From Sphaerodactylus townsendi (taxonomy: Eukaryota), in the NCBI RefSeq assembly GCF_021028975.2, contig NC_059440.1:32612001-32676000 (forward strand): a stretch of 64,000 nucleotides of DNA. The letters are read 5' to 3'. Below the pieces are notes generated by a model. The model saw only the letters and a list, made by a program, of their open reading frames with translations. It searched no databases and was not told the DNA's origin. Shown piece after piece: positions 3,525-55,212 of this stretch (position 1 is the stretch's first letter; every line of letters begins with the position of its first letter). A program made the position numbers and the translations under genes.

Positions 3525-4084
3525 TCATTAAACTCCAGACACTCTGAGCAGGCTCGCTTATAGAAACTGCTGACCAAAGGGACAGCTGCAGTCATTGAAA
3601 GAAAAGACTGTAAGGAAATATTTGTTGCTATTTAGGGGGGTTTTTTGGAAAGGATTTTGTTAAATTGTGTTAACACCTGTAAGCCTACTTTGTTCCAATC
3701 TTGTTAGTAAGGCCTTTGAAAGCCTGCTGTTCCCTTCCCTTGTTTCTTACAGCTGGAAATGCTAACTAGTTGCCAATTTGGATTGGTTTGTTCAGCTTTC
3801 AGGGATGACTAAGATCACCAAAAAAAACCAACCTCTTTCTTAAAAGCAACTGTTCTTAAAATTTTGAGTTTACAAAGAGAGAAAGGCATCCAAACTCTAG
3901 TTCACAGGTGTCAAACTCATGGCCCTCCAGATGTTACACCTATGTAAGACTAAGAACAGCCAATTCTTGTAAAGGCTGCCAACCTAACTATCTGAAGGCC
4001 AGTTTAATCCATTATCAGTAGTCATGCTTATTCACACATTCTGGTTAAAACCGGGGGGGGGGGGGGGGGGCGGCAGGGGGGAAC

Positions 4085-4377
4085 AGAAGAAGAGTTTGGA
4101 TTTATATCCCCCCCTTTCTCTCCTGTAGGAGATTCAAAGGGGTTTACAATCTCCTTTCCCTCCCCACCCTCAAAACAAACACCCTGTAAGGTGGGTGGAG
4201 CTGAGAGAGCTCCGAGAAGCTGTGACTAGCCCAAGGTCACCCAGCTGGCGTGTGTGGGAGTGCACAGGCTAATCTAAATTCCCCAGATAAGCCTCCACAG
4301 CTCAGGCGGCAGAGCGGGGAATCAAACCCGGTTCCTCCAGATTAGATACACGAGCTCTTAACCTCCTACGCCACTGC
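4085..4377 (-). mobile_element. Squam3-like SINE
   Basis: Reverse-complement copy of 301-599. Confidence 0.85.
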
Positions 4378-18209: not shown

Positions 18210-19149
18210 TGTTTTCCTCTTAATGGTGAAAAGAGGTTGGGGAAAGGGGTGGCTCTGTAAGTCTCTTGAGGGCTGTTCTTTCAGGAAGCAGACTTCTAGG
18301 GAATTCCTGTCCTGCTGCCTAATTCCTTAGGGGTATCTCAAAATTGCATAGTCGGAGGTTAAGAGTAACAGCACAGAACGCTCCCCCCTTGCACACTCAA
18401 CTTCCTTTGCTCCACCTGTTCAACAAGAGAGCCTCACACTCACAAACACCTCTGAGCCAACCTGCTCTCAAAACCTGAACCTTCCGGTATTTCCCTCTCC
18501 CGGTCCCTTAGCTGCCTCTCCTTCCACAAGGCACCCCAAAAGCAGCTCTATGGATCCCAGCTCTTTTTTTTTTAGCCTCTGAAGGCAGTTGCCCCTCAAA
18601 GCCTACCCCAGGCCACCTCCTCTACTATAGAGCACAAAAGTTGTCTCCACTGTAGCTCCTACCTCTACCAGCTTCCTGTATACCCGTTGGCTTACTGTCT
18701 CCCCTAAACTACCCTAAAGTCACAAGGTTGGCACAAGGTTCCTCTGTACCCCAAGACCTCTCTCTTTACTGTAGCCTGTAGACCCCAAGCCCCCAAAGGC
18801 GTCACACTTCGTATTCCAGACCCCCCACGGCTTGCTGCCTCGTGTGTTCCCCAAATGCAGGCTGCCTTCCGTGTAACTCACAATCCCTATTGCTCCCATA
18901 GACGTATACATGGACCCCACTCCCTTACCCTAAAGCCCCAGCGGCCTGCTGGCCCCGGTATACTCATATATACGAACTACAGTGCCTGCTGCCAAGGACG
19001 TTACACAAGCCGCCCGTGCCGGAGCCACAACTTATCCCCTGCCCCCTGACTGGCACCCTCGGTCACCCTACAGCTTCTAGGTTCCCCTCTGAAGTCCTGC
19101 AGGAAGAGAAGGGCAAGAGCACAGCCCAGCCCCTGCTCCGAGCCTCTCG

Positions 19150-19800
19150 ATGCCACCAACAGAGCCCCTGAGGCTGCGCCCCTTCCCCAGCTGCTGCTGC
19201 TCCTGCCACCCCACACAGAGATTATTCATCAAAACAAGAAGGCGGCGGCAGTGGCCATCTTGCCTCGGATCACGTGACACCCTCCTCCGTCTCCGCCTCC
19301 TCCCCGCTTTGCCTACGACCCGCCGAACGTGCCCCCACCGCCAACGCGCACGCGCGCGGAGCGGTGGCCAATGGGGAAGCGAGGGGCGGGAAGTCCTTTC
19401 CCTCTCCGCCATCGCTCCCGCCCCCAAACCCACGCGCAGCCAGACCCCCCCTCCACAGAGGGCGCGCGCTCGAGCGGCGGCCAATGGGCGAGCCGAGGGG
19501 GTGGGACCGGCCCAACGCGAAGCCAGAGCTGGATAGGCACACGCGTGCGAGCGCGCGCGCTCGGGGCGGCCAATAGCGCCGAGGGGGTGGACGTGACGTG
19601 CCCCTTTCGTTTCCCGCCCTCATCCCGCTTTCCAAATGCTGCTGTACAAAGCTTTGCTGAAGCGGTGGGGGGTGAGGAGAGTCAGGCGGGAGGAGGGGCT
19701 TATGGCCAGCGCCATAGCAACAGGGGCAGGGCAAGACCTGTCACGAGGCGGGGAGAAGCGGGAAAAAGGGCGCGGGGGGGAGGGCTCTTCGTTTGAGGCG
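19150..19800 (-). promoter_or_regulatory. UBE4B CpG-island promoter
   Basis: Dense CpG/GC content. CCAAT boxes at 19368, 19481 and 19570, GC boxes, E-box TCACGTGAC 19270-19278, YY1-like GCCATCTT near 19254-19261, E2F-like TTTCCCGC near 19610. Confidence 0.85.
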
Positions 19801-34495: not shown

Positions 34496-35884
34496 TATTG
34501 ATAGATAACAGCTGTTGTCGTCTTCAGTATGGGAACTAAAAGCTGCTGTGGAAGTTGCCTTGCTGAGAGCACCAGGCACGAATTATCGCGAATAAATAAA
34601 TCATTTAAGCCGCCACGGTGCCCATTACCGGATATCATTCCAGCAGGAGCATCTGGAAAGCCAAAAGCTGGCACGAGACCCTGGAACCTCCCCTCCCCAC
34701 ATGTCTCCTCTTTGCTGCCACCAAAGCAAACAGAGCTGGGAGCCAAGTCAGGATTTTTATATGTTCCTTGTTCTCTTCACTGCATTCGCCCTTCTACTTA
34801 CTGGCAGACCGTTCTCTGTTTAATTAACCGGTCCTGCATTCAGGTTCTCTCCTAGCAAGACTGGGTAAGGATATTATTACTATAAAGATGCTTTGGGGAG
34901 CCAACTGGCACTGAAAAAGCAGGGATATAAATTTCATCAGGAAGTACAGTCAGAGGATGACAGCGTTTCTGTCATCGCTCACAAGGAGAGGGAGGTAAGC
35001 GTATATTCCAGGAGGCAGACCACAGCAAGGCCCGGATGGGACTGCGAAAATGTTTCAAATGGACCTGCTGACTAGAACCTCCAACAGAATGTTCCAACTT
35101 GGATAAACTCAAGAAAGTCTTTATATACTCAACACATGTGCTAGCTTGGGCCTTGAACAATTGCAGGACTGGGGGGAAATTTGGACCCTCCCCCAATGCC
35201 CCCTCCTGGATACTATCAATTCTCTGGACCTTGAATAGGCTGATTTCTGCTTCCCAACCCCACCCCCCCCCCCCCCGCCCTTGAATAATTTTCAACTGCT
35301 CTGTACATTCAGTGCACGATCATTTCTCACTGGGCCATTTCAATAGATGCCTCCCCCCCTTTCTTTCGATTTACAGATTCATGTTTTTCTGCATACCTAG
35401 AGAGACCCTAAAATATACTAGGACCCCCAGTCAATCTGTGGGCAACCCAGCTTCAGTAGTTGTGGGACTGGTTCCACACACTTCACTATTATCATGAATG
35501 ATATGGCTTCAAGTAAATCAAACCATAGGAGTCTGAACCAGTCAAAAAACAAACAACAAACAGCAGAGAAGGGTTAATTGATTTCGACAACCGCCCAGTC
35601 TTTCCGGCTGGAGGACAGACTGCATGGTTGCCAACTTTGGGAAGGGAAATTTCTGGAGATTTGGGGAGGATTCAGAGGAGGGTGAACTTCATTAGGCTAT
35701 AATTCCACAGAGCCCACCTTCCAAAACAGTTGTTTTCTCCAGGGGATCCAACTTTTATAGCCCAGGTTAATCTTGGGAGATTTCCCACCCTCGGCCTCGC
35801 CTGGAGGTTGGCAACCGAACGGACAGACCCTGTGACAGTCAGAGCGTATCCTTGAGGACCTTCTTAAGCTAAGGGGCATTGCTA

Positions 35885-36800
<916 letters not shown>

Positions 36801-37069
36801 CCAGCTGTGTGCCCGAATTCTTCCTAGCCAATGATGCCAACCTCCCGGTGGGACCTGCAGATCGTCTAGAATTACAAAATATCCCTAGACTGCAGAGATT
36901 ACTTGCCCTGGAGAAAAGCGGGCTTTCTATATCCTGCTGAGGTCTCATCCCCAGACCCTGCCCTCTGCATGCTGCATCCCAAAAACAACTGGATTCAAAT
37001 CCCACCTGGATGGCGGGGCTCAACCTGGACAGACTCTGCTCTTTCTCCCCAGGTCCTTGGCAGCTGGCT

Positions 37070-37143
37070 ATGATCCACTTCTTCCTTGCTCACGCGGCCT
37101 ACCACTTCAGTCGATGGCTACCCAGGCACCACCGACTCCGACT
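37070..37143 (+). CDS. Unannotated 4-TM protein gene (TMEM274-like by position), coding exon A: MIHFFLAHAAYHFSRWLPRHHRLR(L)
   Basis: Acceptor ctctttctccccag|37053, gctATG start, donor CT|GTAAGC. Phase 2 matches exon B. Confidence 0.75.
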
Positions 37144-37398
37144 GTAAGCACCACCGGGCGTTCAGGTTGTTCCCAGCCTCACCCCTTCTAGTCTTCCTCC
37201 CCTGACATTTTGCAGCAGGACGCCAGCTCCCAAATCCCTCTGATTTTGGGCTTAGTGCCATGAGCTGACAAATCTCAGAAGCTAAGCTGGGACAGCTCTG
37301 ATTGGTACTTGGGATGGCAGACCACCAAAGAAGTCCAAGGTTGTGATGTAGAGGCAGGCAATGGCAAACCACCTCTGAATGCCTCTTGCCTTGAAAGC

Positions 37399-37510
37399 CA
37401 GTGGCGTAGTGCCAATGGGGCGGGGGGCGCCTGTGCGTGGGCATAGAGGGGACATTCTGGGGCGGGGCACACGCGTGCCCTGGGCGCAGTCCCCCCTCGC
37501 TCCACCCCTG
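37399..37510. mobile_element. Short hAT MITE nested in a 5S-derived SINE
   Basis: CAGTGGCGTAG...CTCCACCCCTG with perfect TSD ttgaaagc. Confidence 0.75.
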
Positions 37511-37971
37511 TTGAAAGCCCCATAAGATTGCTATAAATCTGCCGTGACTTGATAACACTTTTCAACAACCAATAAGAGTGCACCCACCCCCCACCCCAAA
37601 TCTTTGGGGTTCTGTGTTAGGTGACTCGATGGAGAACTTGAGCCCTGAGTGGACCTTGCCCACCTCCCATACAAACTGACTGCAAGGCACTGGGGCTTCT
37701 GTTGCACAGGGGCTCCTTAGTAAAAGATCCAATCTGGAAAGGGTTTTTAGAAATGTGAAAACGCCCTCCTAAGAGCCATAATCACCATATCCCATCATTC
37801 TCTGGTCCTCCATTCCTCTTTGAAGGCCTTCAATCAGATATGACCATTGAATGATGCTTGGAACCAGCCCACCCTCAAGCCTGCAGCTTGGTGGGAGAGA
37901 GAGAGATTCCCAAATGACAACCATGTGATTGCTTGGGTGTTTCCCCCCCGCCCCTGTCTTTCTTTCCCCAG

Positions 37972-38034
37972 CCAGGCTGTTGTCTTCATCCTTGGACTCT
38001 CTGCTCTCCTTCTCCAAATCTACATCCTGTTAAG
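37972..38034 (+). CDS. 4-TM gene exon B: QAVVFILGLSALLLQIYILL(R) (TM1)
   Basis: Strong polypyrimidine acceptor tctttctttccccag, donor AAG|GTACGA, phase 2 to 2. Confidence 0.82.
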
Positions 38035-38344
38035 GTACGAAGCGGCCATTTCTTAATTGATTTGCCTCCCTCGCAATGTCCCTTTGTATGTTCGCATACC
38101 TTCTCGAATATAAGGATAGCTGACCGGAATTTCTTGAGATGTTCTTGAGAGGATAGAACTTACAGTCTGGCCCATTGGGATTTGGGGATTGGTTTTGATT
38201 TTTTAAAAAAAATACAAATCTCTGTTGACAAGAAGGCTACCAGCTGCTTTCCTGAAGGTCTGAGGGTTCAAACTCCACATGCGGAGGACTGAAAATACAA
38301 TTGAAGGCTGAGTTGGGAAACAGTTAGGGTTACACTGACAGCTC

Positions 38345-38570
38345 ATAAGAACATAAGAACAAGCCTGCTGGATCAGACCAGAGTCCATCTAGTCCAGCTC
38401 TCTGCTACTCGCAGTGGCCCACCAGGTGCCTTTGGGAGCTCACGTGCAGGAGGTGAAAGCAATGGCCTTCTGCGGCTGTTGCTCCTGAGCACCTGGTTTG
38501 CTAAGGCATTTGCAATCTCAGATCAAGGAGGATCAAGATTGGTAGCCATAGATTGACTTCTCCTCCAGTA
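38345..38570 (-). mobile_element. CR1 3'-end fragment
   Basis: Longer copy of 33904-34008. Confidence 0.65.
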
Positions 38571-39223
38571 TGGTGACCATCCATTTCAGGCCTCTCTGAC
38601 CTTGGCCTGATTCTGTGCAGTGTTATACCAAGAGGCAAGACACGATTGAATTCTGCAATGCTCTAAGCGCAGAAATCAGTAGTGAATGCAGAACTCACAC
38701 CCCAACCAGCTCCAGTTGTGTCTGAAAAAGGAGGCAAGATTCCAGCTGTTAAGCAAGTGATTTTAGTCAGTAGCACCTTAAAGACTACATACACACAGAG
38801 TCTCAGATAAAAATGTTAGCATGGTCAGTTGAGGTGCAGCCGTCAAGAAAATTGCATGCTTCTGCATCAGAGCATAGAACAGATTTGAGTTCAGTAAAAT
38901 TTTAGAGATCAACAACATTTTGGGGGTATGAGTTTTCAAATCTGTTCTATGGCAGCCTTGGCAGACCAACACAGGAATCCTCTGAAACATAAACTGATTT
39001 TGTATCTCAAATATACAATTTTAAAAATTGCATCTTTTAATTATTTGGGATCAGCGGCCCTTGGGGGACAGGAGAGTTTGCACTTTGGAAAACTGGTGTT
39101 AGCTGTCGGAGCCCAGGGGTTAGAGCGGACTGCGAAAGGTGTGATCACACACAAAAAAATGATCAAAGATGAATATTCGGTACAGGAAGTGGACCTGTCT
39201 GGTTTCTCTGTGTCGCTTTGCAG

Positions 39224-39303
39224 ACCAAGGTCTTCTCACTACTGTGGGCAGCCTCTTCTTTACAACCTGGTCGGAAGCATCGTCTTTACTTTCTTCACCA
39301 TAG
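39224..39303 (+). CDS. 4-TM gene exon C: PRSSHYCGQPLLYNLVGSIVFTFFTI(G)
   Basis: Acceptor tgtcgctttgcag, donor TAG|GTACGT, phase 2 to 1. Confidence 0.82.
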
Positions 39304-39400
39304 GTACGTACAACAGCAAGCCGTCTGTCAAAGACAACTGTGCCATCGGACTGCAGTTTGAGGGTCTATTTTATTTTATTATGATGCTCAGACATGCTTA

Positions 39401-39697
39401 GGAGCAGCAGTGGCGTAGGAGGTTAAGAGCTCGTGTATCTAATCCGGAGGAACCGGGTTTGATTCCCAGCTCTGCCGCCTGAGCTCTGGAGGCTTATCTG
39501 GGGAATTCAGATTAGCCTGTACACTCCCACACACACCAGCTGGGTGACCTTGGGCTAGTCACAGCTTCTCGGAGCTCTCTCAGCCCCACCCACCTCACAG
39601 GGTGTTTGTTGTGAGGGGGGAAGGGCAAGGAGATTGTCAGCCCCTTTGAGTCTCCTGCAGGAGGGAAAGGGGGGATATAAATCCAAACTCTTCTTCT
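39401..39697 (+). mobile_element. Squam3-like SINE
   Basis: Full-length young copy. Confidence 0.85.
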
Positions 39698-39982
39698 CCT
39701 TATGCACATGGGCTTCTGTGTAATAGGGGATTTTCGTGGGCGTGCTTCCCCACTGTTTTTGGTGACTTTCTTGGAACAAACTGCTTGCAGTGATGGACGA
39801 TAATAGGCCTCCATGTCGTTTGTACCCCCTTTTCTTTCCAATGGGGGCTTAACAACATTCTCCCCTTCTGTTTTATCGTCACAACAACCCTCTTGAGGTA
39901 GCTTAGGTTGAGAAGCCGGATTGGCTATGGTCAGACAAAAGGCCACGCTGATTCTTTCCCTTCCCCTTTCTCGCCCTTCCAG

Positions 39983-40113
39983 GACTGGCCTTGCTCCTGG
40001 TCATGGTGGAACCCCTGACAGGGGAGCTGAAGATCATCTTCTCCATCTTTGGAATGGGCTCGTTTGTGGAAGGAGTCTGCACGGCCATATTGACATCATT
40101 AGCAGCACAGTGT
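39983..40113 (+). CDS. 4-TM gene exon D: LALLLVMVEPLTGELKIIFSIFGMGSFVEGVCTAILTSLAAQC
   Basis: Long polypyrimidine acceptor ...tctcgcccttccag, weaker donor TGT|GTTGGT, phase 1 to 0. Overlaps ORF 39991..40191. Confidence 0.8.
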
Positions 40114-40679
40114 GTTGGTATTGTTTTGGTTTGTGCTTGGCCCGCACACCACAGGATTTTGGGTATCCAGGGTTCTTTAGACACCTTCTGAAATGTATAT
40201 AAATAGAATTTGGAGATCCCCCCCACCCCCCCGCTTCACACACATATAATTGTGTGCCAAGGAATCCAAACCGTGTGCCAAGACAGACTTGTAGAGATGA
40301 TTGCATGGTAATCAGTTTTGCATATGCATGCTCATTTTGCATAAACTGATTTGCATAAACCAGGCTGTTTTGCATAACTCATTTTGTTTTTCTTAATCAT
40401 GGGGAAGGATTATCAAGCTAAGGGGCACTGGGGGTTGGTTTGTTGCTGTTGTTTTGGAAAAGCAGGATACAAAAGAAATAGACGACCACCCTCCATCTGA
40501 TAAATCCCACTCAACGATCTGGCTGCCACTGATCCCTTTGGTGGTTACGCCCAAGAAGGGGCAGATCAATCTGGCCCAACTGGGCACAAACCCAACCTGT
40601 TAGAAATCCCTCACTCCATTATATCCACTGATCCACTCTATCCTATCTAATCTCCAAGGTGCTCAGGGCAGAGTTCCCT

Positions 40680-40920
40680 GCTTCCCCACCACCCATTTTA
40701 ACCTCACAACACCCCTGTGAAGTGGGTTAGGCTGAGAACATGTGACAGGCCCAAGGGTCACCTTGTGAGCTTCATGTATAGGAACAGGGAAACACATCCA
40801 GTTCACCAGATTAAAGTCTGCTGCTCATGTGTAAGAGCAGGAAATCAAACCTGGTTATCCAGATTAGAGTCCACCTTCTCTTAACCACCACATCTCGCTG
40901 GTTCTCACCACTACACCATG
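40680..40920 (-). mobile_element. Squam3-like SINE, older and diverged
   Basis: CACAACACCCCTGTGAAGTGGGTTAGGCTGAGA...CCAGATTAGAGT...CTTAACCAC. Confidence 0.65.
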
Positions 40921-41079
40921 CCGATGTACTTATGGCCCTAGTCTAGATGGCTGTAAAAAGAACTGGATGAATTCATTCAGGAAATTCATACAAATTCATT
41001 AAAAAGCTCCCATAGTCAGAGGTAGTCTTTTCTGAGAATACCAGGTTTTTTGGGGGGTGGTAACCGCAGGAGGAAGCCT

Positions 41080-41373
41080 GGCAGCAGTGGCATAGTGGCT
41101 AAGAGCAGGTGCACTCTGATCTGGAGGAACCGGGTTTGATTCCCTGCTCTGCCGCTTGAGCTGTGGAGGTTTATCTGGGGAATTCAGATTAGCCTGTGCA
41201 CTCCCACACACACCAGCTGGGTGACCTTGGGCTAGTCACAGCTTCTCGGAGCTCTCTCAGCCCCACCTACCTCACAGGGTGTTTGTTGTGAGGGGGGAAG
41301 GGCAAGGAGATTGTCAGCCCCTTTGAGTCTCCTACAGGAGAGAAAGGGGGGATATAAATCCAACTCTTCTTCT
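41080..41373 (+). mobile_element. Squam3-like SINE
   Basis: Full-length copy. Confidence 0.85.
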
Positions 41374-41524
41374 TTTGTGTCTCGGCTTGTGGGCTTTCAG
41401 TTGCATTTGGATGGCCACTGTACAGAACAGGATGCCGGACCTTTGGTCTGATCCAGCAGAGCTCATCTGTTGTTCTTTCAGCACCAAACCCATTTAACCA
41501 CCATTACCCCTGTCTTTCATCTAG

Positions 41525-41591
41525 GCCAAAACGACCCCTGAGCTCTATTACATGTCAGTGGTTCTGTCAGTGAGCAGCATGTTATCAACTG
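41525..41591 (+). CDS. 4-TM gene exon E: AKTTPELYYMSVVLSVSSMLST(A)
   Basis: Acceptor tgtctttcatctag, consensus donor CTG|GTAAGT, phase 0 to 1. Confidence 0.82.
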
Positions 41592-42538
41592 GTAAGTGGA
41601 ACCATTTTTTCTTTGCATTCAAATCAGGCACCTCAGGACTTCAGAGGGAGGCAGCACCTGTCGTGGAAACCTGTTCAGGCGAATTGTGCTCTTAACAGTC
41701 AGGACTGCTGGAAAAACCCCAGGAGATGGAATGTGCCTGCATAGGCAAGTTGAGTGAGGTCAGGTACCACCCAAAACCCTAGATCTAGAAAATATGGAGC
41801 TGAAGGATGGGAAAGAGAGCTGGTCCCACTGGCCTCCTTGGAGGCCTGGGCCATTATGGTGAAAACAAAGAATGTTCTGTTGGTACCTTGAAGACAAACA
41901 GATGTGCTGATTTCTGAGTCACCAACGATCATGTTGGTCTGCAGTAGATCAGCTAGATTTTATTCCAGTAGCACCACAGAGACCAACAAGATTTTCAGGG
42001 CATAAGCTCTGGAGAAAGAAGCGTTAACTCTCAAGCTGATGTCCCCAAAATCTTGTTGGTCTCTAAGGTTATTATTATTATTTATTGTTATTTATTGTGT
42101 TTATAAACCGCCCTCCCCCGAAGGGCTCAGGTACTACAGGAATTGAAGCAAGGTGACAGCGGATGCTCTCCTTTTTTTTCTGGCATAAGAGAGAGTAAAA
42201 TTTCTGTCCACGGAAATAGCCAAGAAAATTATGGGCAGGGGCGGAATGTCCTCCCCCAGAGCCAGCAATTGCACTAGAGGCCTGTTATGCAAACATTCAA
42301 GTCACTTATTTGCTTTACTTAACTTATCCTTTCATGAAGGGAGTTCAAATATCTAGGCAATGGTAGCAAAAGAGAGAATGGAGAAGAAGTACATGCAGAT
42401 GTCCCTAAGGCTGTTTTTGCATACCGCCATGAGGACTAGAAACTTTGCACAGCGTGAAAATCAACCATCTTAGGATACCAAATACTCAGCAAGGGCTGCT
42501 CCTAATGCCATCTAATGCCACTTTTGTGTTTCTTTCAG

Positions 42539-42669
42539 CCTTCTTCTCTGTTCTGGGGCTATTCTGGTTTGCCAACATGGCTTCTCCTGGCCTTGTACTG
42601 AACAAGCAGGCAAAGAGTGGGATCTGTTACGGGCCAGTCTCTGAATGCAGCTGCCTGTGGCACGTCTGA
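42539..42669 (+). CDS. 4-TM gene last exon F: FFSVLGLFWFANMASPGLVLNKQAKSGICYGPVSECSCLWHV*
   Basis: Branch-like ctaat plus acceptor ttttgtgtttctttcag, phase 1, TGA at 42667-42669. CDS total 546 nt = 181 aa. Confidence 0.82.
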
Positions 42670-42976
42670 CCCTTCTAAACCTCTGCCCCTGTTTCCCCAG
42701 CAACCCCTCTGCCTGCCATGGATCATCACTGGCTAAGCTGCCTTCCCCCGCCTCCATCCCTGGAGAAATTGACTGATCTCGGTGGCAGCCTCAGTGGGAA
42801 GACCTTCAGAACTGGGGATATTCATAGCAAATGTCTTTAACTATTCATATGTGTGAGCATCAGGTAGCCTTTGAGTTGAAAACATTGGGCTTTAGCCTCG
42901 TTAAAAGGCACGCTGTGGGGGTTTGCAGCCTTCTAACCATTTTCAAGAGTTTTTGTAGAACATCTTACCACGACCT

Positions 42977-42982
42977 ATTAAA
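42977..42982 (+). terminator. Candidate polyA signal (ATTAAA) of the nested TM gene
   Basis: ATTAAA about 310 nt after the stop, followed by a T-rich tract. Confidence 0.5.
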
Positions 42983-45900
42983 AAGGAAAATATGCTTTTC
43001 TCTTTTTCTCTCTCTTTTGCACAAAATAGTGAATGCACAAAGCCCTCTTTGGGATGCGGCTTGAAGTCTAAGGCCTAACAGCGGCAGGAGAGTTGCTATG
43101 GGAACAGGTACAGAGCCAGAGATAAAGGCACTGAGGCTAGAATATCTGAAGCTCTGGTGTCAAAGGAAGGGGCCGTGTGCTTTTATCAAGCTCAAGGCCC
43201 AACTGCTTCTTTCTGGGCTCCAAAGGAAATTTTAGGAAAGAGCTTTCTTTATGTTCATTTGGCATTAAGTTTATTTAAAAAACCCCTGTAATATAGCCAC
43301 ACGTTCCAGGGGGATTCAGCAATGCATTCTAGCTATTCTTCCTCACACCCCCAAATTCAGTGGACAACCTGTTCAGCTGCCTTTATGGAATCAGACCACA
43401 GATCCATCTGACTTAGTACTGGGACCTCTGTCTGGCAGGGTGTCAGGCAGAGAAGGATCTCAACAGCAGCCTCATGATATGTTCAACCTGAAAAGGCCGG
43501 GGACTGAGGCTGGGAGCTTCGGCACACAAATGAAATCAACAGGCATGGACTGGAATAACTGTGTACGATTGCACTGTAGAACACACAAAACAAAGCAACA
43601 GCAACTACTGAAAACTATAGGCAGTGTGCTGTACTGGTTAGAGTGCTGGGCAAGGATCTGGGAGACCTAGGTCTGAACCCCCGCACCGCCACCCCCTTGG
43701 GTCACTCACGCACTCCCAGCCTAACCTACCTCACAGAGTTGTTGTGAGGATAAAATGGAAGACAGGTGAATGATGTAAGTTATTTTGGGACCCCATGAAT
43801 GAAGTAAACAAATAATAATTCCACCACGCTTTGGTCTGTGGAAATGTGAAGATTGCTCCTTCATCACACCAGCATTGACCAAAGAAACATGGCAGCAACC
43901 TCTGGACCCCAGTTTTCTGGAACTCAGAAGGGTGGTATTATGAGTGCAGTATTATCATTTGAAATCATCCAGTTGTGTTGGCCAATATAGACACCATAGA
44001 TATGTAATCCTAATATATTCATGATACCTAGCAAGAGCTCTTTCTGATATATATTAGACCTAACGGATATTGTTATATTTGTGGTTTGAAACTATTACTG
44101 TTTTATGTACTGTTTTATTGATTGGAATAAAGGGAAGGGCAGTGAATAAATCAAATCAAATAATAATCTGATGTGCTGGTAAAGGGTTGTGGATCCGTAG
44201 GATATAGCAGCCAAGATTTTTGATTTAGGATATGGGAAGCGCCTCCCCCAGCCCCAAAGTTCAACAGTTGGCCTTGGGCCAATATCTTACATTCTAGACT
44301 ATTTCACAGGATTGTTGTGAGAACGAGGTCAGCATTGTCAAGCAAAACCTTCCAGTATGTAAAAGTGAAACTGAAATGATTACTAACAGGGAGATGAATT
44401 TAAATAAGGTTGCAGGTCTGGTTTAAAACATTCATCCAGCTTCTTTCCATAAAACAAACTGGAATCAATTCATTTCCTGAATTTCAGGATTGGGTTCGTA
44501 GCCAAAAGGCATATCGACACTTGGGTCTGTGCAGAATTCATTCACAGCTCCACACAACACGCAGATGGCCAGCCTGCAGCTGCACGGGTCTGACGACTGC
44601 AAATTAAGCATAACTAGCCACAGGCCCAGGTTGTCTCAGAGCAGAGATTCCCTCACAGTCCTTTGACCATAAGATGGCCACCTTTTTTGTGAACAGCAGT
44701 TGTGTCATTTCTAGACACTTCACTAGTGAAGATATTTTTTTTCCAGCATAGTTTCAGAGGAGAGCTGTACTGGTCTGCAGTAGAACAGTTAGATTCAAGT
44801 CCAGAAGCACCTTAGAAACGAACACAATTATCAGGGTATAAGCTTTTGAGAGTCAACACTTGATGAAGGGAGTGTTGACTCTTAAAAGCTTGTACCCCAA
44901 AAATTGTGTTGCTCTCTAAGACACTAGTGAACTTGAATCTAGCTTTTCCCAGTATGGAAGCAATGAAGGAACAGCTGCTTCAGTAACATTTCTGCCTTAG
45001 GCAACTGTTAAAAGGTACAGACTCTCCTGCCCCAAGCACTTCTACTGAATCAACTCTGGTGGACAGCCACCTACACACAGACTGGGATTCCCAGCTTTTT
45101 TCTACTAGTCTTGCATCCATGTGTCCACAAGTAGCCCAACAGAGAGACCCTTGGAAAGCTGTACGTTCCTTACAACGTTATCTCAGTACCAGGAAAATGT
45201 CTGCTGTCAAATTTTTACATGCTAACCCATCTTCCCACCTTACAGAGCAAACCATTTTAATCGTTCCTGTATACAGCAGGCCACTCAAAACTCCATGAGA
45301 TAAATGACTGGGTAAGCCATGTTAGATTGCTACCCCAAAATTCAGCAGAAATCCAGTGGCAGAGTAAAATAAGCACAGCCTTGGATTGAGGAAGTTAGTT
45401 GCTTCTGGATTTCATGTCTCATAGTTCACCCTCGGCTTGGATCTGATCCTACTCTGCCCATCTATCTGCAGTCAGGAGCAGCTCTCGCCCACTCTTAACA
45501 GATTGAATTATCTTTGATTGATGATTGTTTCTAACCAACTTCTCTTTGTACTGTCTTCCCACTCCCACCTTTCTGCAGCTTGCAACTTTCAGTACAGGTA
45601 TATTTCTTATGGGTGGCACCTGGTGAAGCAGTTGTGACAGATGAAAGCTCCTGCTGTAATACATTTTGTTAGTGTTTAAGCTGCCCTTGGACTTCTGTTT
45701 AACAAAGATGGTCACAAATGCTCAGGACCTTGAACATAGGCCAGTGTAGCTGCTCTGTAGCTCAGTGGCTACCTTCTGGAGAAATGCCCTGCAACGAGAA
45801 AATAGCACCAACCCAGGGGACATTATAGTCGCTCTGCTTTCCTCTTTACACTTTTGTTCCCTCTTTCACTTATTGAAAGAGAAAGCGAGAGCTAGGCTAG

Positions 45901-47785: not shown

Positions 47786-48098
47786 GGAGCAGCAGTGGGG
47801 TGGTGGCTAAGAGCAGTGGCAAAGAGCAGGTGCACTCTGATCTGGAGGAACTGGGTTTGATTCCCAGCTCTGCCGCTTGAGTTGTGGAGGCTTATCTGAG
47901 GAATTCAGATTAGCCTGTACACTCCCACACACGCCAGCTGGGTGACCTTGGGCTAGTCACAGCTTTTCGGAGCTCTCTCAGCCCCACCCACCTCACAGGG
48001 TGTTTGTTGTGAGGGGGGAAGGGCAAAGAGATTGTAAACCCCTTTGAGCCTCCTACAGGAGAGAAAGGGGGGATATAAATCCAAACTCTTCTTCTTCT
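47786..48098 (+). mobile_element. Squam3-like SINE with small head duplication
   Basis: Full-length copy, AAGAGCAG duplicated in the head. Confidence 0.85.
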
Positions 48099-48627
48099 AA
48101 TGTGGTATAGGCCTGCGGTCTGTCTGATTTTTAATTTGTTACTTTATTTAGTTTTTGTGCCCCTTTTTTCTGCTAGATTGGCTGCCAATACAATTTACAA
48201 TTCACATCTGTTACTTTATATGCACAGCTCCATTTTGATAGACGTTTTACACAATGAGAGAAGCATCACCAAAATATTGTCTCACCTGTTGGTTATTATT
48301 GTCCACTGTGATTGGCAGTGCTTCTCCAGGGTCCCAAGCAGAGAAACATCTTTCCCAGCATCTACCTGAGTCACAGTTTGAACCTGTATACAAAGCAGGT
48401 ATCTCTAAGCTACAGCCCTTCATCAAATATAGCTGTGATATGCTGTGGTGCTTTTTGTTAACGTTGGAATTACTTTTTGGGTTATGTGATTTTTAGTGAC
48501 AATATTTTACAAGCGGTCTGTTATAACAGATTTTCATTGACAGAATTCCCCCCCCCCCCTTTGACTTGAGAAGCACCAGTCCAAATAGTTCTGGACTTCT
48601 AATATGCTTTTTCATAAGGTCATAGAG

Positions 48628-53057: not shown

Positions 53058-53424
53058 NNNNNNNNNNNNNNNNNNNNNNNNNNNNNNNNNNNNNNNNNNN
53101 NNNNNNNNNNNNNNNNNNNNNNNNNNNNNNNNNNNNNNNNNNNNNNNNNNNNNNNNNNNNNNNNNNNNNNNNNNNNNNNNNNNNNNNNNNNNNNNNNNNN
53201 NNNNNNNNNNNNNNNNNNNNNNNNNNNNNNNNNNNNNNNNNNNNNNNNNNNNNNNNNNNNNNNNNNNNNNNNNNNNNNNNNNNNNNNNNNNNNNNNNNNN
53301 NNNNNNNNNNNNNNNNNNNNNNNNNNNNNNNNNNNNNNNNNNNNNNNNNNNNNNNNNNNNNNNNNNNNNNNNNNNNNNNNNNNNNNNNNNNNNNNNNNNN
53401 NNNNNNNNNNNNNNNNNNNNNNNN
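53058..53424. other. Assembly gap (367 N) in the last LZIC intron
   Basis: Run of N abutting an L2 3' end. Confidence 0.99.
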
Positions 53425-54985
53425 TTCCACCCGGGAGGGCTCTGAGGCGGTCAATACAACAACTAATATAATCTAAAATAACAAGAAGAGCACATTCAAT
53501 AAATACATACAATATAATAAAATTAGGGCTCTAAATCTCACATTAAAACCTTTTAAAACAGCACACAAAACATCTGGCAATCTAAAGGTCCCTCTGAGGA
53601 GGGAACGGAAAGGCCCAAGATGTAAAAGGCTGCAGATGATAAAAAGGGAAGGAGGGGGCGCCATCAGCGGCCGGCTTCTCCAAAGGCCTGCTGGAACAGC
53701 TCGGTCTTACAGGCCCTGCGGAACTCTCTAAGGTCCCACAGGGCCTGGACGGAGGAAGAGCATTCCACCAGGCAGGGGCCAGGGCTGTAAAGGCCCTGGC
53801 CCAGTGGTGGGATCCAAAAATTTTAGTAACAGGTTCCCATGGGGGTGGGATTCAAACTGTGGCATAGCGCCAATGGGGCTGGGAGGGGCACGACAGGGGC
53901 GTGGCTGGGCATTCCGGGGGCGGGCCATTCCTCAAGGGGCGGGGGCTGTGGCAGAGGAAGACGCCAGGCCACTCGCGTTAAGCTCAGCAGACGAGGGAAA
54001 TGAATGCACGCAGGCGCAGGCTGCCACGCATGCCGGTGCACCTCCTGCTAGACTGCTTCAAGTTCTGTGTGCTACTGCTGAGAGGAGGGGCAAAAATCAC
54101 ATGGCAAACTCATCAATTAGTAACCCCCTCTCGGCACACACAAATAATTAGTAACCTACTCTCGGGAACCTGTGAGAACCTGCTGGATCCCACCTCTGCC
54201 CTGGCCCTAGTGGAGGCCAGCCGCATCATTGAAGGGCCGGGGACCACCAGAGAAGATTAGCCTCCGCTGAACGCAGAGGCCGAGACGCTGGGACATCTTG
54301 AGGGTCAGGCTTGTCGGTCCCGAAGGTACGAGGGTCCCAGGCCGCATAAGGCCTTAAAGGTTAGCACCAACACCTTAAAGACGATTCAGAACTCAACTGG
54401 CAGCCAATGCAGATAATGCAACACTTGCAAGATATGATCTCTAACGGCACCACCAGTGAGCAGCCGGGCCGCAGCATTTTGGACCAGTTTCAGCTTCCGA
54501 ATCAGACGCAAGGGCATGCCCGCGTAGAGCAAGTTACAATAGTCTAACCTGGAGGTGACCGTTGCATGGATCACAGTGGCTAGGTCCGCTTGGGAGAGGT
54601 AGGGGGCCAGCTGCTGGGCCTGACGCAGATGGAAAAACGCAACCTGGGTTATATGGGCCACCTGGGCCTCCATTGAAAGAGACGAATCCAGGTGGACCCC
54701 CAGGCTGCGGGTGGAGGAGGCCGGTGCCAATTTGGCCCCCTTCCACACCGGCGGTTGGAAATCCCCAGGCCCCCCTTTGCGGCCCAGCCAAAGGATCTCC
54801 GTCTTCGATGGATTCAGCTTCAACCTGCTCTGCAGTAACCAACCAGCGATTGCCTCCAAACATTGCTGTAGAGCTGCAGGTTCCCCACTCCATCAACAGA
54901 ATGAGCTGAGTGGCATCAGCATATTGATGACAAATCAGTCCAAAGCTCCATACCAACTGAGCAAGGGGTCGCATATAGATATTAA
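53425..54985 (-). mobile_element. L2-clade LINE, 5'-truncated, degenerate RT
   Basis: ORF pieces HQYADATQL (mutated YADD), LKLNPSKTEIL, RLDYCN, VQNAAARLL and LHWLPV, with a frameshift between ORFs. Confidence 0.9.
53802..54198. mobile_element. hAT non-autonomous element inserted in the L2
   Basis: Inverted relative of 25223-25599, perfect TSD ccctggcc. Confidence 0.9.
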
Positions 54986-55212
54986 ATAACAGCGGGGATA
55001 ACAGTTAGGTGTATACTTGTTGTCATACCCAGATTTGCTTCTGCATAATGTGTGAAGCTGCTGTTGGCAGTCCTCTTTTGCAGTCTCAAAACAAAGAGAG
55101 AGGTTGAGTTCAGATCTCTTATGGAGAAGCAAAGTAACTTAGAAGCAGATGATGATGATGATGGGATAAATGCAAGGTTAAATGTTTTCCTTTGTTTCTC
55201 ATTTAACTGCAG

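What the first reader, a model, noticed from the sequence alone, without database searches (positions are those of the whole stretch)
37053..42982. Hidden intact six-exon four-TM protein gene antisense between NMNAT1 coding exons and the NMNAT1/LZIC promoter
Seen in sequence: six plus-strand exons (37070-37143, 37972-38034, 39224-39303, 39983-40113, 41525-41591, 42539-42669), all GT-AG with polypyrimidine tracts. All five junction phases (2,2,1,0,1) match and give a stop-free 181-aa ORF: MIHFFLAHAAYHFSRWLPRHHRLRLQAVVFILGLSALLLQIYILLRPRSSHYCGQPLLYNLVGSIVFTFFTIGLALLLVMVEPLTGELKIIFSIFGMGSFVEGVCTAILTSLAAQCAKTTPELYYMSVVLSVSSMLSTAFFSVLGLFWFANMASPGLVLNKQAKSGICYGPVSECSCLWHV. An ATTAAA follows at 42977 and a CpG island lies upstream. 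The ORF track shows only fragments because the exons are short. Inference: a functional, uncharacterised small membrane protein nested in NMNAT1 intron 1. I recall a human pseudogene TMEM274P at the syntenic spot, so this may be the intact orthologue of a gene lost in humans. That identity is not verified.
Basis: partly seen in the sequence, partly recalled or inferred. Interest (0 to 1): 0.9.

Follow-up and report, generated by a model that had tools for sequence, protein, structure and literature searches.

The report
Gecko TMEM274 gene beside NMNAT1
The six-exon gene is real and intact, but it is the gecko copy of TMEM274, a small four-helix membrane protein family described in 2019 (a working gene in mouse, a dead one in humans) and already listed for this gecko, so only its function remains unknown.

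Summary
The six plus-strand exons, their AG/GT sites, the phases 2,2,1,0,1 and a stop-free 181-codon frame are all there.

It is not a chance ORF. A search with exon 4 alone returned full-length vertebrate proteins whose other parts match exons 1, 2, 3, 5 and 6 in order. A profile search gave 66 relatives, including proteins named Tmem274 in rodents; 181 aa is the usual length from sharks to lizards and in two snails.

All six exon peptides are 100% identical to UniProt A0ACB8EFA6 of Sphaerodactylus townsendi. That entry has 5 extra residues from a donor 15 nt further on. So the gene is already annotated, not hidden.

The order NMNAT1(-)/TMEM274(+)/LZIC(+) recurs in Lerista, Podarcis and mouse. 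dN/dS is 0.13-0.21 among three lizards, and exon lengths and splice sites are identical.

Function is unknown. There is no Pfam, NCBIfam, PDB or fold match. The model shows an N-terminal helix, four membrane helices and a disordered Cys-rich tail.

No RNA evidence could be obtained for this species. Verdict: real, conserved, already known.

The parts
37053..37143 (+). First coding exon of TMEM274. ATG at 37070. A conserved acceptor at 37052|37053 lies 17 nt upstream of the ATG, so a non-coding exon probably lies further upstream.
   Evidence: ATG and GT donor; 92% identical to Lerista P0018; the pyrimidine tract plus AG 17 nt upstream of the ATG is conserved in Lerista and Podarcis; the upstream in-frame ATG at 37010 is absent from Lerista and Podarcis.
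37972..38034 (+). Coding exon 2 (TM1)
   Evidence: AG/GT, and the same 63-nt length in Lerista and Podarcis.
39224..39303 (+). Coding exon 3. It encodes the conserved loop RPxSSxYCxQPLL, with an invariant Cys, and the start of TM2.
   Evidence: 92% identical to both Lerista and Podarcis; Cys, Pro and Leu-Leu columns invariant across 39 sequences.
39983..40113 (+). Coding exon 4 (TM2 end and TM3). The existing annotation of this species reads on to a GT at 40129, adding VGIVL.
   Evidence: this exon alone retrieved the family (E 3e-9); the extra 5 residues align to a gap in all other family members, and Lerista and Podarcis have good donors at the position equivalent to 40113|40114.
41525..41591 (+). 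Coding exon 5 (TTPELYY motif, start of TM4)
42539..42669 (+). Last coding exon (TM4 end and the Cys-rich tail ending CLWHV, then TGA)
   Evidence: the tail is conserved in frogs, lizards, non-teleost ray-finned fishes, an eel, sharks and two gastropods.
42670..42982 (+). Likely 3' UTR, up to ATTAAA at 42977
   Evidence: ATTAAA is the first poly(A) hexamer after the stop; 42670-42876 aligns collinearly with Lerista and Podarcis. The actual cleavage site is untested.
35801..36800 (.). CpG island between the NMNAT1 first coding exon (minus) and TMEM274 (plus). It is a candidate shared or bidirectional promoter.
   Evidence: GC and CpG o/e. (NMNAT exon at 35885-36004, minus strand). The promoter role is inferred, not tested.

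Best explanation
Window 37053-42982 (+) holds the intact orthologue of TMEM274 in a gecko, almost certainly Sphaerodactylus townsendi. It has six coding exons and encodes 181 aa.

Predicted protein: a short N-terminal amphipathic helix, four transmembrane helices, and a flexible C-terminal tail of about 25 residues that is Cys-rich and ends in CLWHV. It is an ancient, slowly evolving small membrane protein kept by purifying selection.

Inferred, not shown:
- Topology is N-in/C-in by the positive-inside rule.
- The two invariant cysteines, in the TM1-TM2 loop and the TM3-TM4 loop, would then lie on the same extracytoplasmic side and could form a disulfide.
- The tail would be cytosolic, with cysteines that could carry lipid and a hydrophobic C-terminus that could dock a partner.
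- On that reading it acts as a small structural or accessory membrane subunit rather than an enzyme.

Its biochemical function is unknown.
For: Homology:
- Exon 4 alone found full-length relatives, with the match at residues 74-116 in two of them, as in the model.
- All six exon peptides tile those relatives in order.
- The profile search gave 66 relatives including 'Tmem274' of Phodopus and Peromyscus. The 181-aa length recurs in lizards, ray-finned fishes, sharks and gastropods.

Identity and species:
- All six exon peptides are 100% identical to UniProt A0ACB8EFA6 of S. townsendi.
- That protein is 55% identical to rodent Tmem274, E 2e-58.

Synteny:
- The order NMNAT(-)/this gene(+)/LZIC(+) holds in the window, Lerista, Podarcis and mouse (coordinates in PMC10376023).

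Selection:
- dN/dS is 0.175, 0.208 and 0.132, with Fisher p below 1e-13, and differences are concentrated at third codon positions.
- Exon lengths and AG/GT sites are identical in three lizards.
- Collinear DNA conservation is limited to the exons, about 200 nt of 3' UTR and one intronic stretch after exon 2.

Structure and expression:
- AlphaFold2 model of the Paroedura orthologue: pLDDT 76.7; helices 2-16, 19-45, 57-80, 86-112, 121-153; tail 159-181 below pLDDT 50.
- A 938-nt frog-like Logan contig carries the whole ORF without introns, so it looks like spliced mRNA from a relative.
- Mudge et al. 2019 describe Tmem274 and TMEM274P.
Against: - There is no RNA evidence for this species.
- The exon 4 donor is weak at both candidate sites, so the 181-aa and 186-aa products cannot be told apart without reads.
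- The literature reports at best weak expression in all species examined.
- Topology, disulfide, lipidation and partner binding are inference only.
- No fold or family match gives functional support.
Confidence: 0.93

Rival explanations
1. The six exons are a chance or reader-assembled ORF in non-coding intronic DNA, with no real gene behind them.
For: Short exons joined by abundant GT/AG sites can be stitched into open frames by a free choice of boundaries. No RNA support was obtained for this species.
Against: - A search with one exon recovered proteins that match the other five exons.
- Exon lengths and splice sites are identical in two other lizards.
- dN/dS is 0.13-0.21.
- Four of the five intron positions are approximately shared with a gastropod.
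Confidence: 0.01
2. The locus is a recently inactivated or non-expressed relic in this gecko. The frame is still intact but the gene is transcriptionally silent, as a step towards the human TMEM274P state.
For: There is no RNA evidence here. The exon 4 donor is weaker than in Lerista and Podarcis. The literature reports weak expression everywhere.
Against: - There is no stop, frameshift or lost splice site in 546 nt.
- The gecko branch is included in pairwise dN/dS of 0.18-0.21.
- Exon peptides are 94% identical to Euleptes and 88% to Paroedura.
- A CpG island and a conserved 5' acceptor are retained.
Confidence: 0.05
3. The true product in this species is the 186-aa form of the existing annotation (exon 4 donor at 40128|40129), not the reader's 181-aa form.
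For: UniProt A0ACB8EFA6 uses that donor. It is in frame and scores 5 of 9 against the donor consensus, versus 4 of 9 for 40113|40114.
Against: - Every other family member lacks the 5 residues.
- Lerista and Podarcis have strong donors exactly at the position equivalent to 40113|40114.
- The insertion would lengthen the short conserved TM3-TM4 loop next to the invariant Cys.
Confidence: 0.25

Closest known systems
Mouse Tmem274 and the human unitary pseudogene TMEM274P (Mudge et al. 2019, Genome Res 29:2073, PMC6886504)
   Same: - Same family: the gecko protein is 55% identical to rodent Tmem274 over 160 aa, E 2e-58.
- Same position and orientation: antisense inside or beside Nmnat1, next to Lzic.
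- Same four-helix membrane core.
   Different: - Rodent and other placental proteins have 162-163 aa and end in a different short tail (…CPRPDAKPTV).
- The gecko keeps the 181-aa form with the Cys-rich tail ending CLWHV, shared with frogs, sharks, non-teleost ray-finned fishes and gastropods.
- The human copy is broken, by a stop in the fourth exon and loss of the second coding exon according to the paper. The gecko copy is intact.
UniProt A0ACB8EFA6 (Sphaerodactylus townsendi, 'Uncharacterized protein', 186 aa; P0022)
   Same: All six exon peptides of the window are 100% identical to it. It is the same gene in the same species.
Annotated lizard orthologues: Podarcis muralis LOC114602951, Anolis carolinensis LOC134294530, Paroedura picta LOC143824133, Lerista edwardsae lerEdw1_003116
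   Same: - Podarcis, Anolis and Paroedura (isoform X2) have 181 aa.
- Exon lengths and splice sites were checked and are identical in Lerista and Podarcis.
- The NMNAT/LZIC neighbours were checked and are the same in Lerista and Podarcis.
   Different: Exon-peptide identity is 66-88%. Some models carry annotation artefacts: a 24-aa insert in Lerista, and an N-terminal extension from an upstream ATG in Euleptes and in Paroedura isoform X3.
Generic four-TM bundles (MARVEL domain, CD20/MS4A, claudin-like proteins)
   Same: Four membrane helices, short loops, small size. One family member gave a weak MARVEL hit (E 0.023) and the atlas gave TM 0.50 to a MARVEL cluster.
   Different: There is no significant sequence or fold match: Foldseek found none at E 0.001 or better, and VIA Z was at most 8, which is background for helical bundles. 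It is not a member of any of these families.

Membership tests
TMEM274 | Significant full-length sequence similarity to proteins named Tmem274 | tested here: met
   - Phodopus 'Tmem274' (E 5e-56) and Peromyscus 'Transmembrame protein 274' (E 3e-52) match the profile built from lizard and frog relatives.
- the S. townsendi protein is 55% identical to Phodopus Tmem274, E 2e-58.
- window exon 4 alone against Phodopus Tmem274 gives E 7e-12.
TMEM274 | Position antisense to NMNAT1, between its coding exons and the LZIC promoter | tested here: met
   - Window: NMNAT exon on the minus strand at 35.9 kb; LZIC/ICAT exons on the plus strand at 49-52 kb.
- Same order in Lerista and Podarcis.
- Mouse coordinates place Tmem274 (+) inside Nmnat1 (-) next to Lzic (+).
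TMEM274 | Four transmembrane helices with the conserved loop motifs (RPxSSxYCxQPLL; C..TTPELY) | tested here: met
   Hydropathy, the alignment's invariant columns, and the AlphaFold2 model of the Paroedura orthologue.
TMEM274 | Intact reading frame under purifying selection (a gene, not a pseudogene) | tested here: met
   No internal stop. dN/dS 0.13-0.21 with p below 1e-13.
TMEM274 | Spliced transcript in this species | not testable with these tools
   No RNA run holds the stretch. The only indirect support is an intronless contig from a frog-like organism.
CrcB/Fluc fluoride channel (a name attached to the Vicugna member in UniRef) | Match to the CrcB family models | tested here: not met
   No CRCB hit in Pfam for 39 members at E up to 1, and none in NCBIfam at E up to 10, including the Vicugna protein. 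The name looks like an automatic mislabel.
MARVEL domain | Pfam PF01284 above threshold, or a clear fold match | tested here: not met
   One of 39 members matched, at E 0.023. Atlas TM was 0.50. No PDB match was found.

The most novel reading that the evidence does not exclude
The 181-aa form with the Cys-rich tail (…GICYEPV..C.CLWHV) is the ancestral bilaterian state. It is kept from gastropods to sharks, frogs and lizards. The tail was replaced independently in placental mammals (162-163 aa, …CPRPDAKPTV) and in percomorph-type teleosts, while an eel keeps it. If so, the tail is a separable functional module, for example a lipidated or partner-binding cytosolic anchor, and reptiles rather than mouse would be the better model for the ancestral function of a gene that humans have lost.
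Probability: 0.4. Interest if true: 0.35.

Novelty: already known. Interest (0 to 1): 0.22.

Why it matters
TMEM274 is one of the few ancient, widely conserved vertebrate genes reported as lost only in humans, and nothing is known about what it does. This window adds no new kind of gene.

It does give three things:
- A clean reptile gene model, with evidence of strong purifying selection.
- A probable 5-residue correction to the existing annotation of this gecko.
- The observation that non-mammalian orthologues keep a conserved Cys-rich tail that the mouse protein lacks.

These points are useful to anyone choosing a model organism for studying the function of the family.

Tried and rejected
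RNA evidence:
- The look-up of sequencing runs found only runs that hold the whole stretch, none on record as RNA.
The local blastn used only 36800-39400, 39700-41050 and 41400-43100.

Joined protein:
- The joined 181-aa protein has no reference, so it was never sent to a search, fold or family tool.
- It was built only inside local scripts, to check the frame and the hydropathy.
- All searches were done exon by exon by reference, or with database homologues.

Family and fold searches that gave nothing usable:
- Pfam on the six exon peptides and on 39 family members.
- NCBIfam.
- PDB sequence profile.
- Foldseek against PDB.
- VIA-align wide: Z at most 8, which is helical-bundle background.
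- ESM Atlas by features: only unnamed eukaryotic clusters.
- ESM Atlas by shape: TM at most 0.50.

Other:
- The UniRef label 'Fluoride ion transporter CrcB' on one member was tested and rejected.
- The look-up of encoding contigs had no record for Paroedura (P0020 and P0026) or Anolis (P0023), and gave no DNA for the white shark.
- The search of earlier findings never opened.
Full report
**1. The observation**

The sequence at 36900-43100 and a script confirm every structural claim.
- The six plus-strand segments are 74, 63, 80, 131, 67 and 131 nt long.
- Exons 2-6 are preceded by AG and a pyrimidine-rich tract. Exons 1-5 are followed by GT.
- The cumulative phases are 2, 2, 1, 0, 1.
- The joined frame has 181 codons plus TGA, with no internal stop.
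- ATTAAA lies at 42977 and is the first poly(A) hexamer after the stop.
- A CpG-rich stretch lies at 35801-36800.
- A hydropathy scan gives four hydrophobic segments.

The joined protein was built only inside local scripts for these checks.

**2. Context**

- On the minus strand at about 35.9 kb there is an ORF beginning [32 protein letters not shown]. It matches the start of the cytidylyltransferase-like domain (PF01467). This is the first coding exon of NMNAT1.
- On the plus strand at 49.2-51.8 kb lie LZIC exons, one with the ICAT domain (E 6e-14).
- A second CpG island lies at 46.2-46.8 kb.

**3. Is it a real gene?**

Homology:
- I searched 1.84 billion representative proteins with exon 4 alone (43 aa).
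- There were eight hits, the best at E 3e-9. They include full-length proteins of a lizard (Hemicordylus), a monitor (Varanus), frogs and a monkey.
- In two of them the match falls at residues 74-116, as the model predicts.
- The rest of those proteins matches exons 1, 2, 3, 5 and 6, which were not part of the query. In an alignment the six exon peptides tile the homologues in order, at 67-92% identity to the skink Lerista.
- This independent check excludes a chance ORF.

Family:
- A profile of nine homologues found 66 proteins.
- Among them are 'Tmem274' of Phodopus roborovskii and 'Transmembrame protein 274' of Peromyscus.
- Many have exactly 181 aa: Podarcis, Anolis, Paroedura, paddlefish, bowfin, gar, eel, several sharks, and the gastropods Babylonia and Littorina.

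**4. Species and prior annotation**

- All six exon peptides are 100% identical to P0022, which is UniProt A0ACB8EFA6, an 'Uncharacterized protein' of Sphaerodactylus townsendi with 186 aa. The window is therefore almost certainly from that gecko, and the gene is already annotated there.
- The only difference is five residues, VGIVL.
- Both donors are weak.
- All other family members lack these residues.

Only RNA reads can settle it.

**5. Synteny**

- In Lerista edwardsae the orthologue lies on the plus strand inside the span of a minus-strand PF01467 gene, followed by a plus-strand ICAT gene.
- Podarcis muralis has the same order.
- In mouse (table in PMC10376023):

| Gene | Position on chr4 | Strand |
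|---|---|---|
| Nmnat1 | 149,552,029-149,569,659 | - |
| Tmem274 | 149,561,883-149,567,796 | + |
| Lzic | 149,569,686-149,581,125 | + |

- Mudge et al. 2019 (PMC6886504) introduced Tmem274 as a new mouse coding gene and TMEM274P as a human-specific unitary pseudogene. They report synteny back to coelacanth and possible relatives in scallop and Trichoplax.
- The gastropod locus fetched here is not syntenic. It does share about four of the five intron positions (aa 25/26, 72/73, 116/117, 138/139).

**6. Selection**

The six exons map without gaps onto the Lerista and Podarcis loci. Exon lengths and AG/GT sites are identical in both.

Nei-Gojobori estimates used the 177 whole codons, taken exon by exon. 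The p values are Fisher tests.

| Pair | dN/dS | Fisher p |
|---|---|---|
| gecko-skink | 0.175 | 9e-16 |
| gecko-lacertid | 0.208 | 7e-14 |
| skink-lacertid | 0.132 | 1e-21 |

- Differences concentrate at third codon positions, for example 32/12/61 for gecko-skink.
- Collinear nucleotide similarity between the gecko and the other two lizards is confined to four kinds of sequence: the six exons, a few tens of bases of flank, about 200 nt after the stop, and a stretch after exon 2. That comparison was run beside the barred places.

**7. The 5' end**

- A pyrimidine tract plus AG lies 17 nt upstream of the ATG (window 37052|37053). It is conserved in all three lizards, so an upstream non-coding exon is likely.
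- An in-frame ATG at 37010 exists in the gecko and is used in the Euleptes and Paroedura isoform X3 models. It is absent from Lerista and Podarcis. If the acceptor is used, that ATG would be intronic.
- The promoter could be the 35.8-36.8 kb island, shared head-to-head with NMNAT1, or the 46.2-46.8 kb island. It cannot be decided here, so strict nesting in NMNAT1 intron 1 remains open for this species.

**8. Expression**

- No RNA run holds the stretch.
- Indirect support comes from a 938-nt Logan contig of a frog-like organism. It carries the complete 180-aa ORF without introns, which suggests a spliced mRNA.

**9. What it does**

No known family or fold matched:
- Pfam and NCBIfam.
- PDB sequence profile.
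- Foldseek against PDB: none at E 0.001 or better.
- VIA-align wide: Z at most 8, which is background for helical bundles.
- ESM Atlas: only unnamed clusters by features, and TM at most 0.50 by shape.
- The UniRef label 'CrcB' on the alpaca member is unsupported.

The AlphaFold2 model of the Paroedura orthologue, built with 39 sequences, has pLDDT 76.7 and pTM 0.65. It shows helices at 2-16, 19-45, 57-80, 86-112 and 121-153, and a tail (159-181) below pLDDT 50.

The family alignment shows invariant C53 and C116 (Paroedura numbering) in the TM1-TM2 and TM3-TM4 loops. It also shows the motifs RPxSSxYCxQPLLxNL and TTPELY.

From the charge distribution I infer an N-in/C-in topology. That would put both invariant cysteines on the extracytoplasmic side, where a disulfide is possible, and the Cys-rich tail (…C.CLWHV) in the cytosol. 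This mechanistic sketch is inference only.

The tail is present from gastropods to lizards. It is replaced by unrelated short tails in placental mammals and in several teleosts.

**10. Verdict**

The gene is neither hidden nor new.
- The family was described in 2019.
- The same exons are already a database protein for this species.
- Orthologues are annotated in many reptiles.

What remains open is the function of the family, the exact exon 4 donor, and the promoter in this gecko.

Noticed in passing
window 40114-40128: The existing S. townsendi protein (UniProt A0ACB8EFA6) includes 15 nt beyond the conserved exon 4 end, adding VGIVL. No other family member has these residues, so this is probably a mis-called donor in that annotation.
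   Followed up: yes
window 38035-38300: The intron stretch just after exon 2 aligns collinearly with Lerista and Podarcis at 66-68% identity, unlike the other introns. The Lerista model has a 24-aa insert at this junction. It could be a conserved regulatory element or an alternative exon extension.
   Followed up: partly
window 39400-39700 and 41090-41370 (also 4008-4226 and 47913-48143, among others): Several copies of one SINE-like repeat lie in the TMEM274 introns and elsewhere in the window. The read laying filter tripped inside one copy (39530-39565), so these copies were not searched further.
   Followed up: no
window 37010-37069: An in-frame upstream ATG would add 20 residues (MAGLNLDRLCSFSPGPWQLA). 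It is annotated as the start in the geckos Euleptes and Paroedura (isoform X3) but is absent in Lerista and Podarcis, and it lies upstream of a conserved splice acceptor.
   Followed up: partly
window 19001-19800: A strong CpG island (GC up to 0.70, CpG o/e up to 1.0) lies about 16 kb beyond the NMNAT1 first coding exon on the low-coordinate side. It is presumably the promoter of another gene and was not examined.
   Followed up: no
window 54389-55004 (-): Long minus-strand ORFs here have a reverse-transcriptase-like look (…LLSPLLFNIYMRPLA…), so this is probably a LINE/retroelement fragment downstream of the LZIC exons. An assembly gap lies at 53058-53424.
   Followed up: no
L003:10001-18115 (Babylonia areolata): The gastropod homologue also has 181 aa and shares about four of the five intron positions with the gecko gene. 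The intron between gecko exons 2 and 3 is absent, and the neighbours differ (DUF543 and CSD genes).
   Followed up: partly
alignment A3: Placental mammals (162-163 aa) and several teleosts end in unrelated short tails in place of the Cys-rich …CLWHV tail kept by lizards, frogs, sharks, gar, bowfin, paddlefish, eel and gastropods.
   Followed up: partly
P0005 (Varanus komodoensis KAF7239376.1) and P0031 (Vicugna pacos): Two family members carry misleading database names, 'Chitin synthase 2' and 'Fluoride ion transporter CrcB'. Neither name is supported by the family searches.
   Followed up: partly
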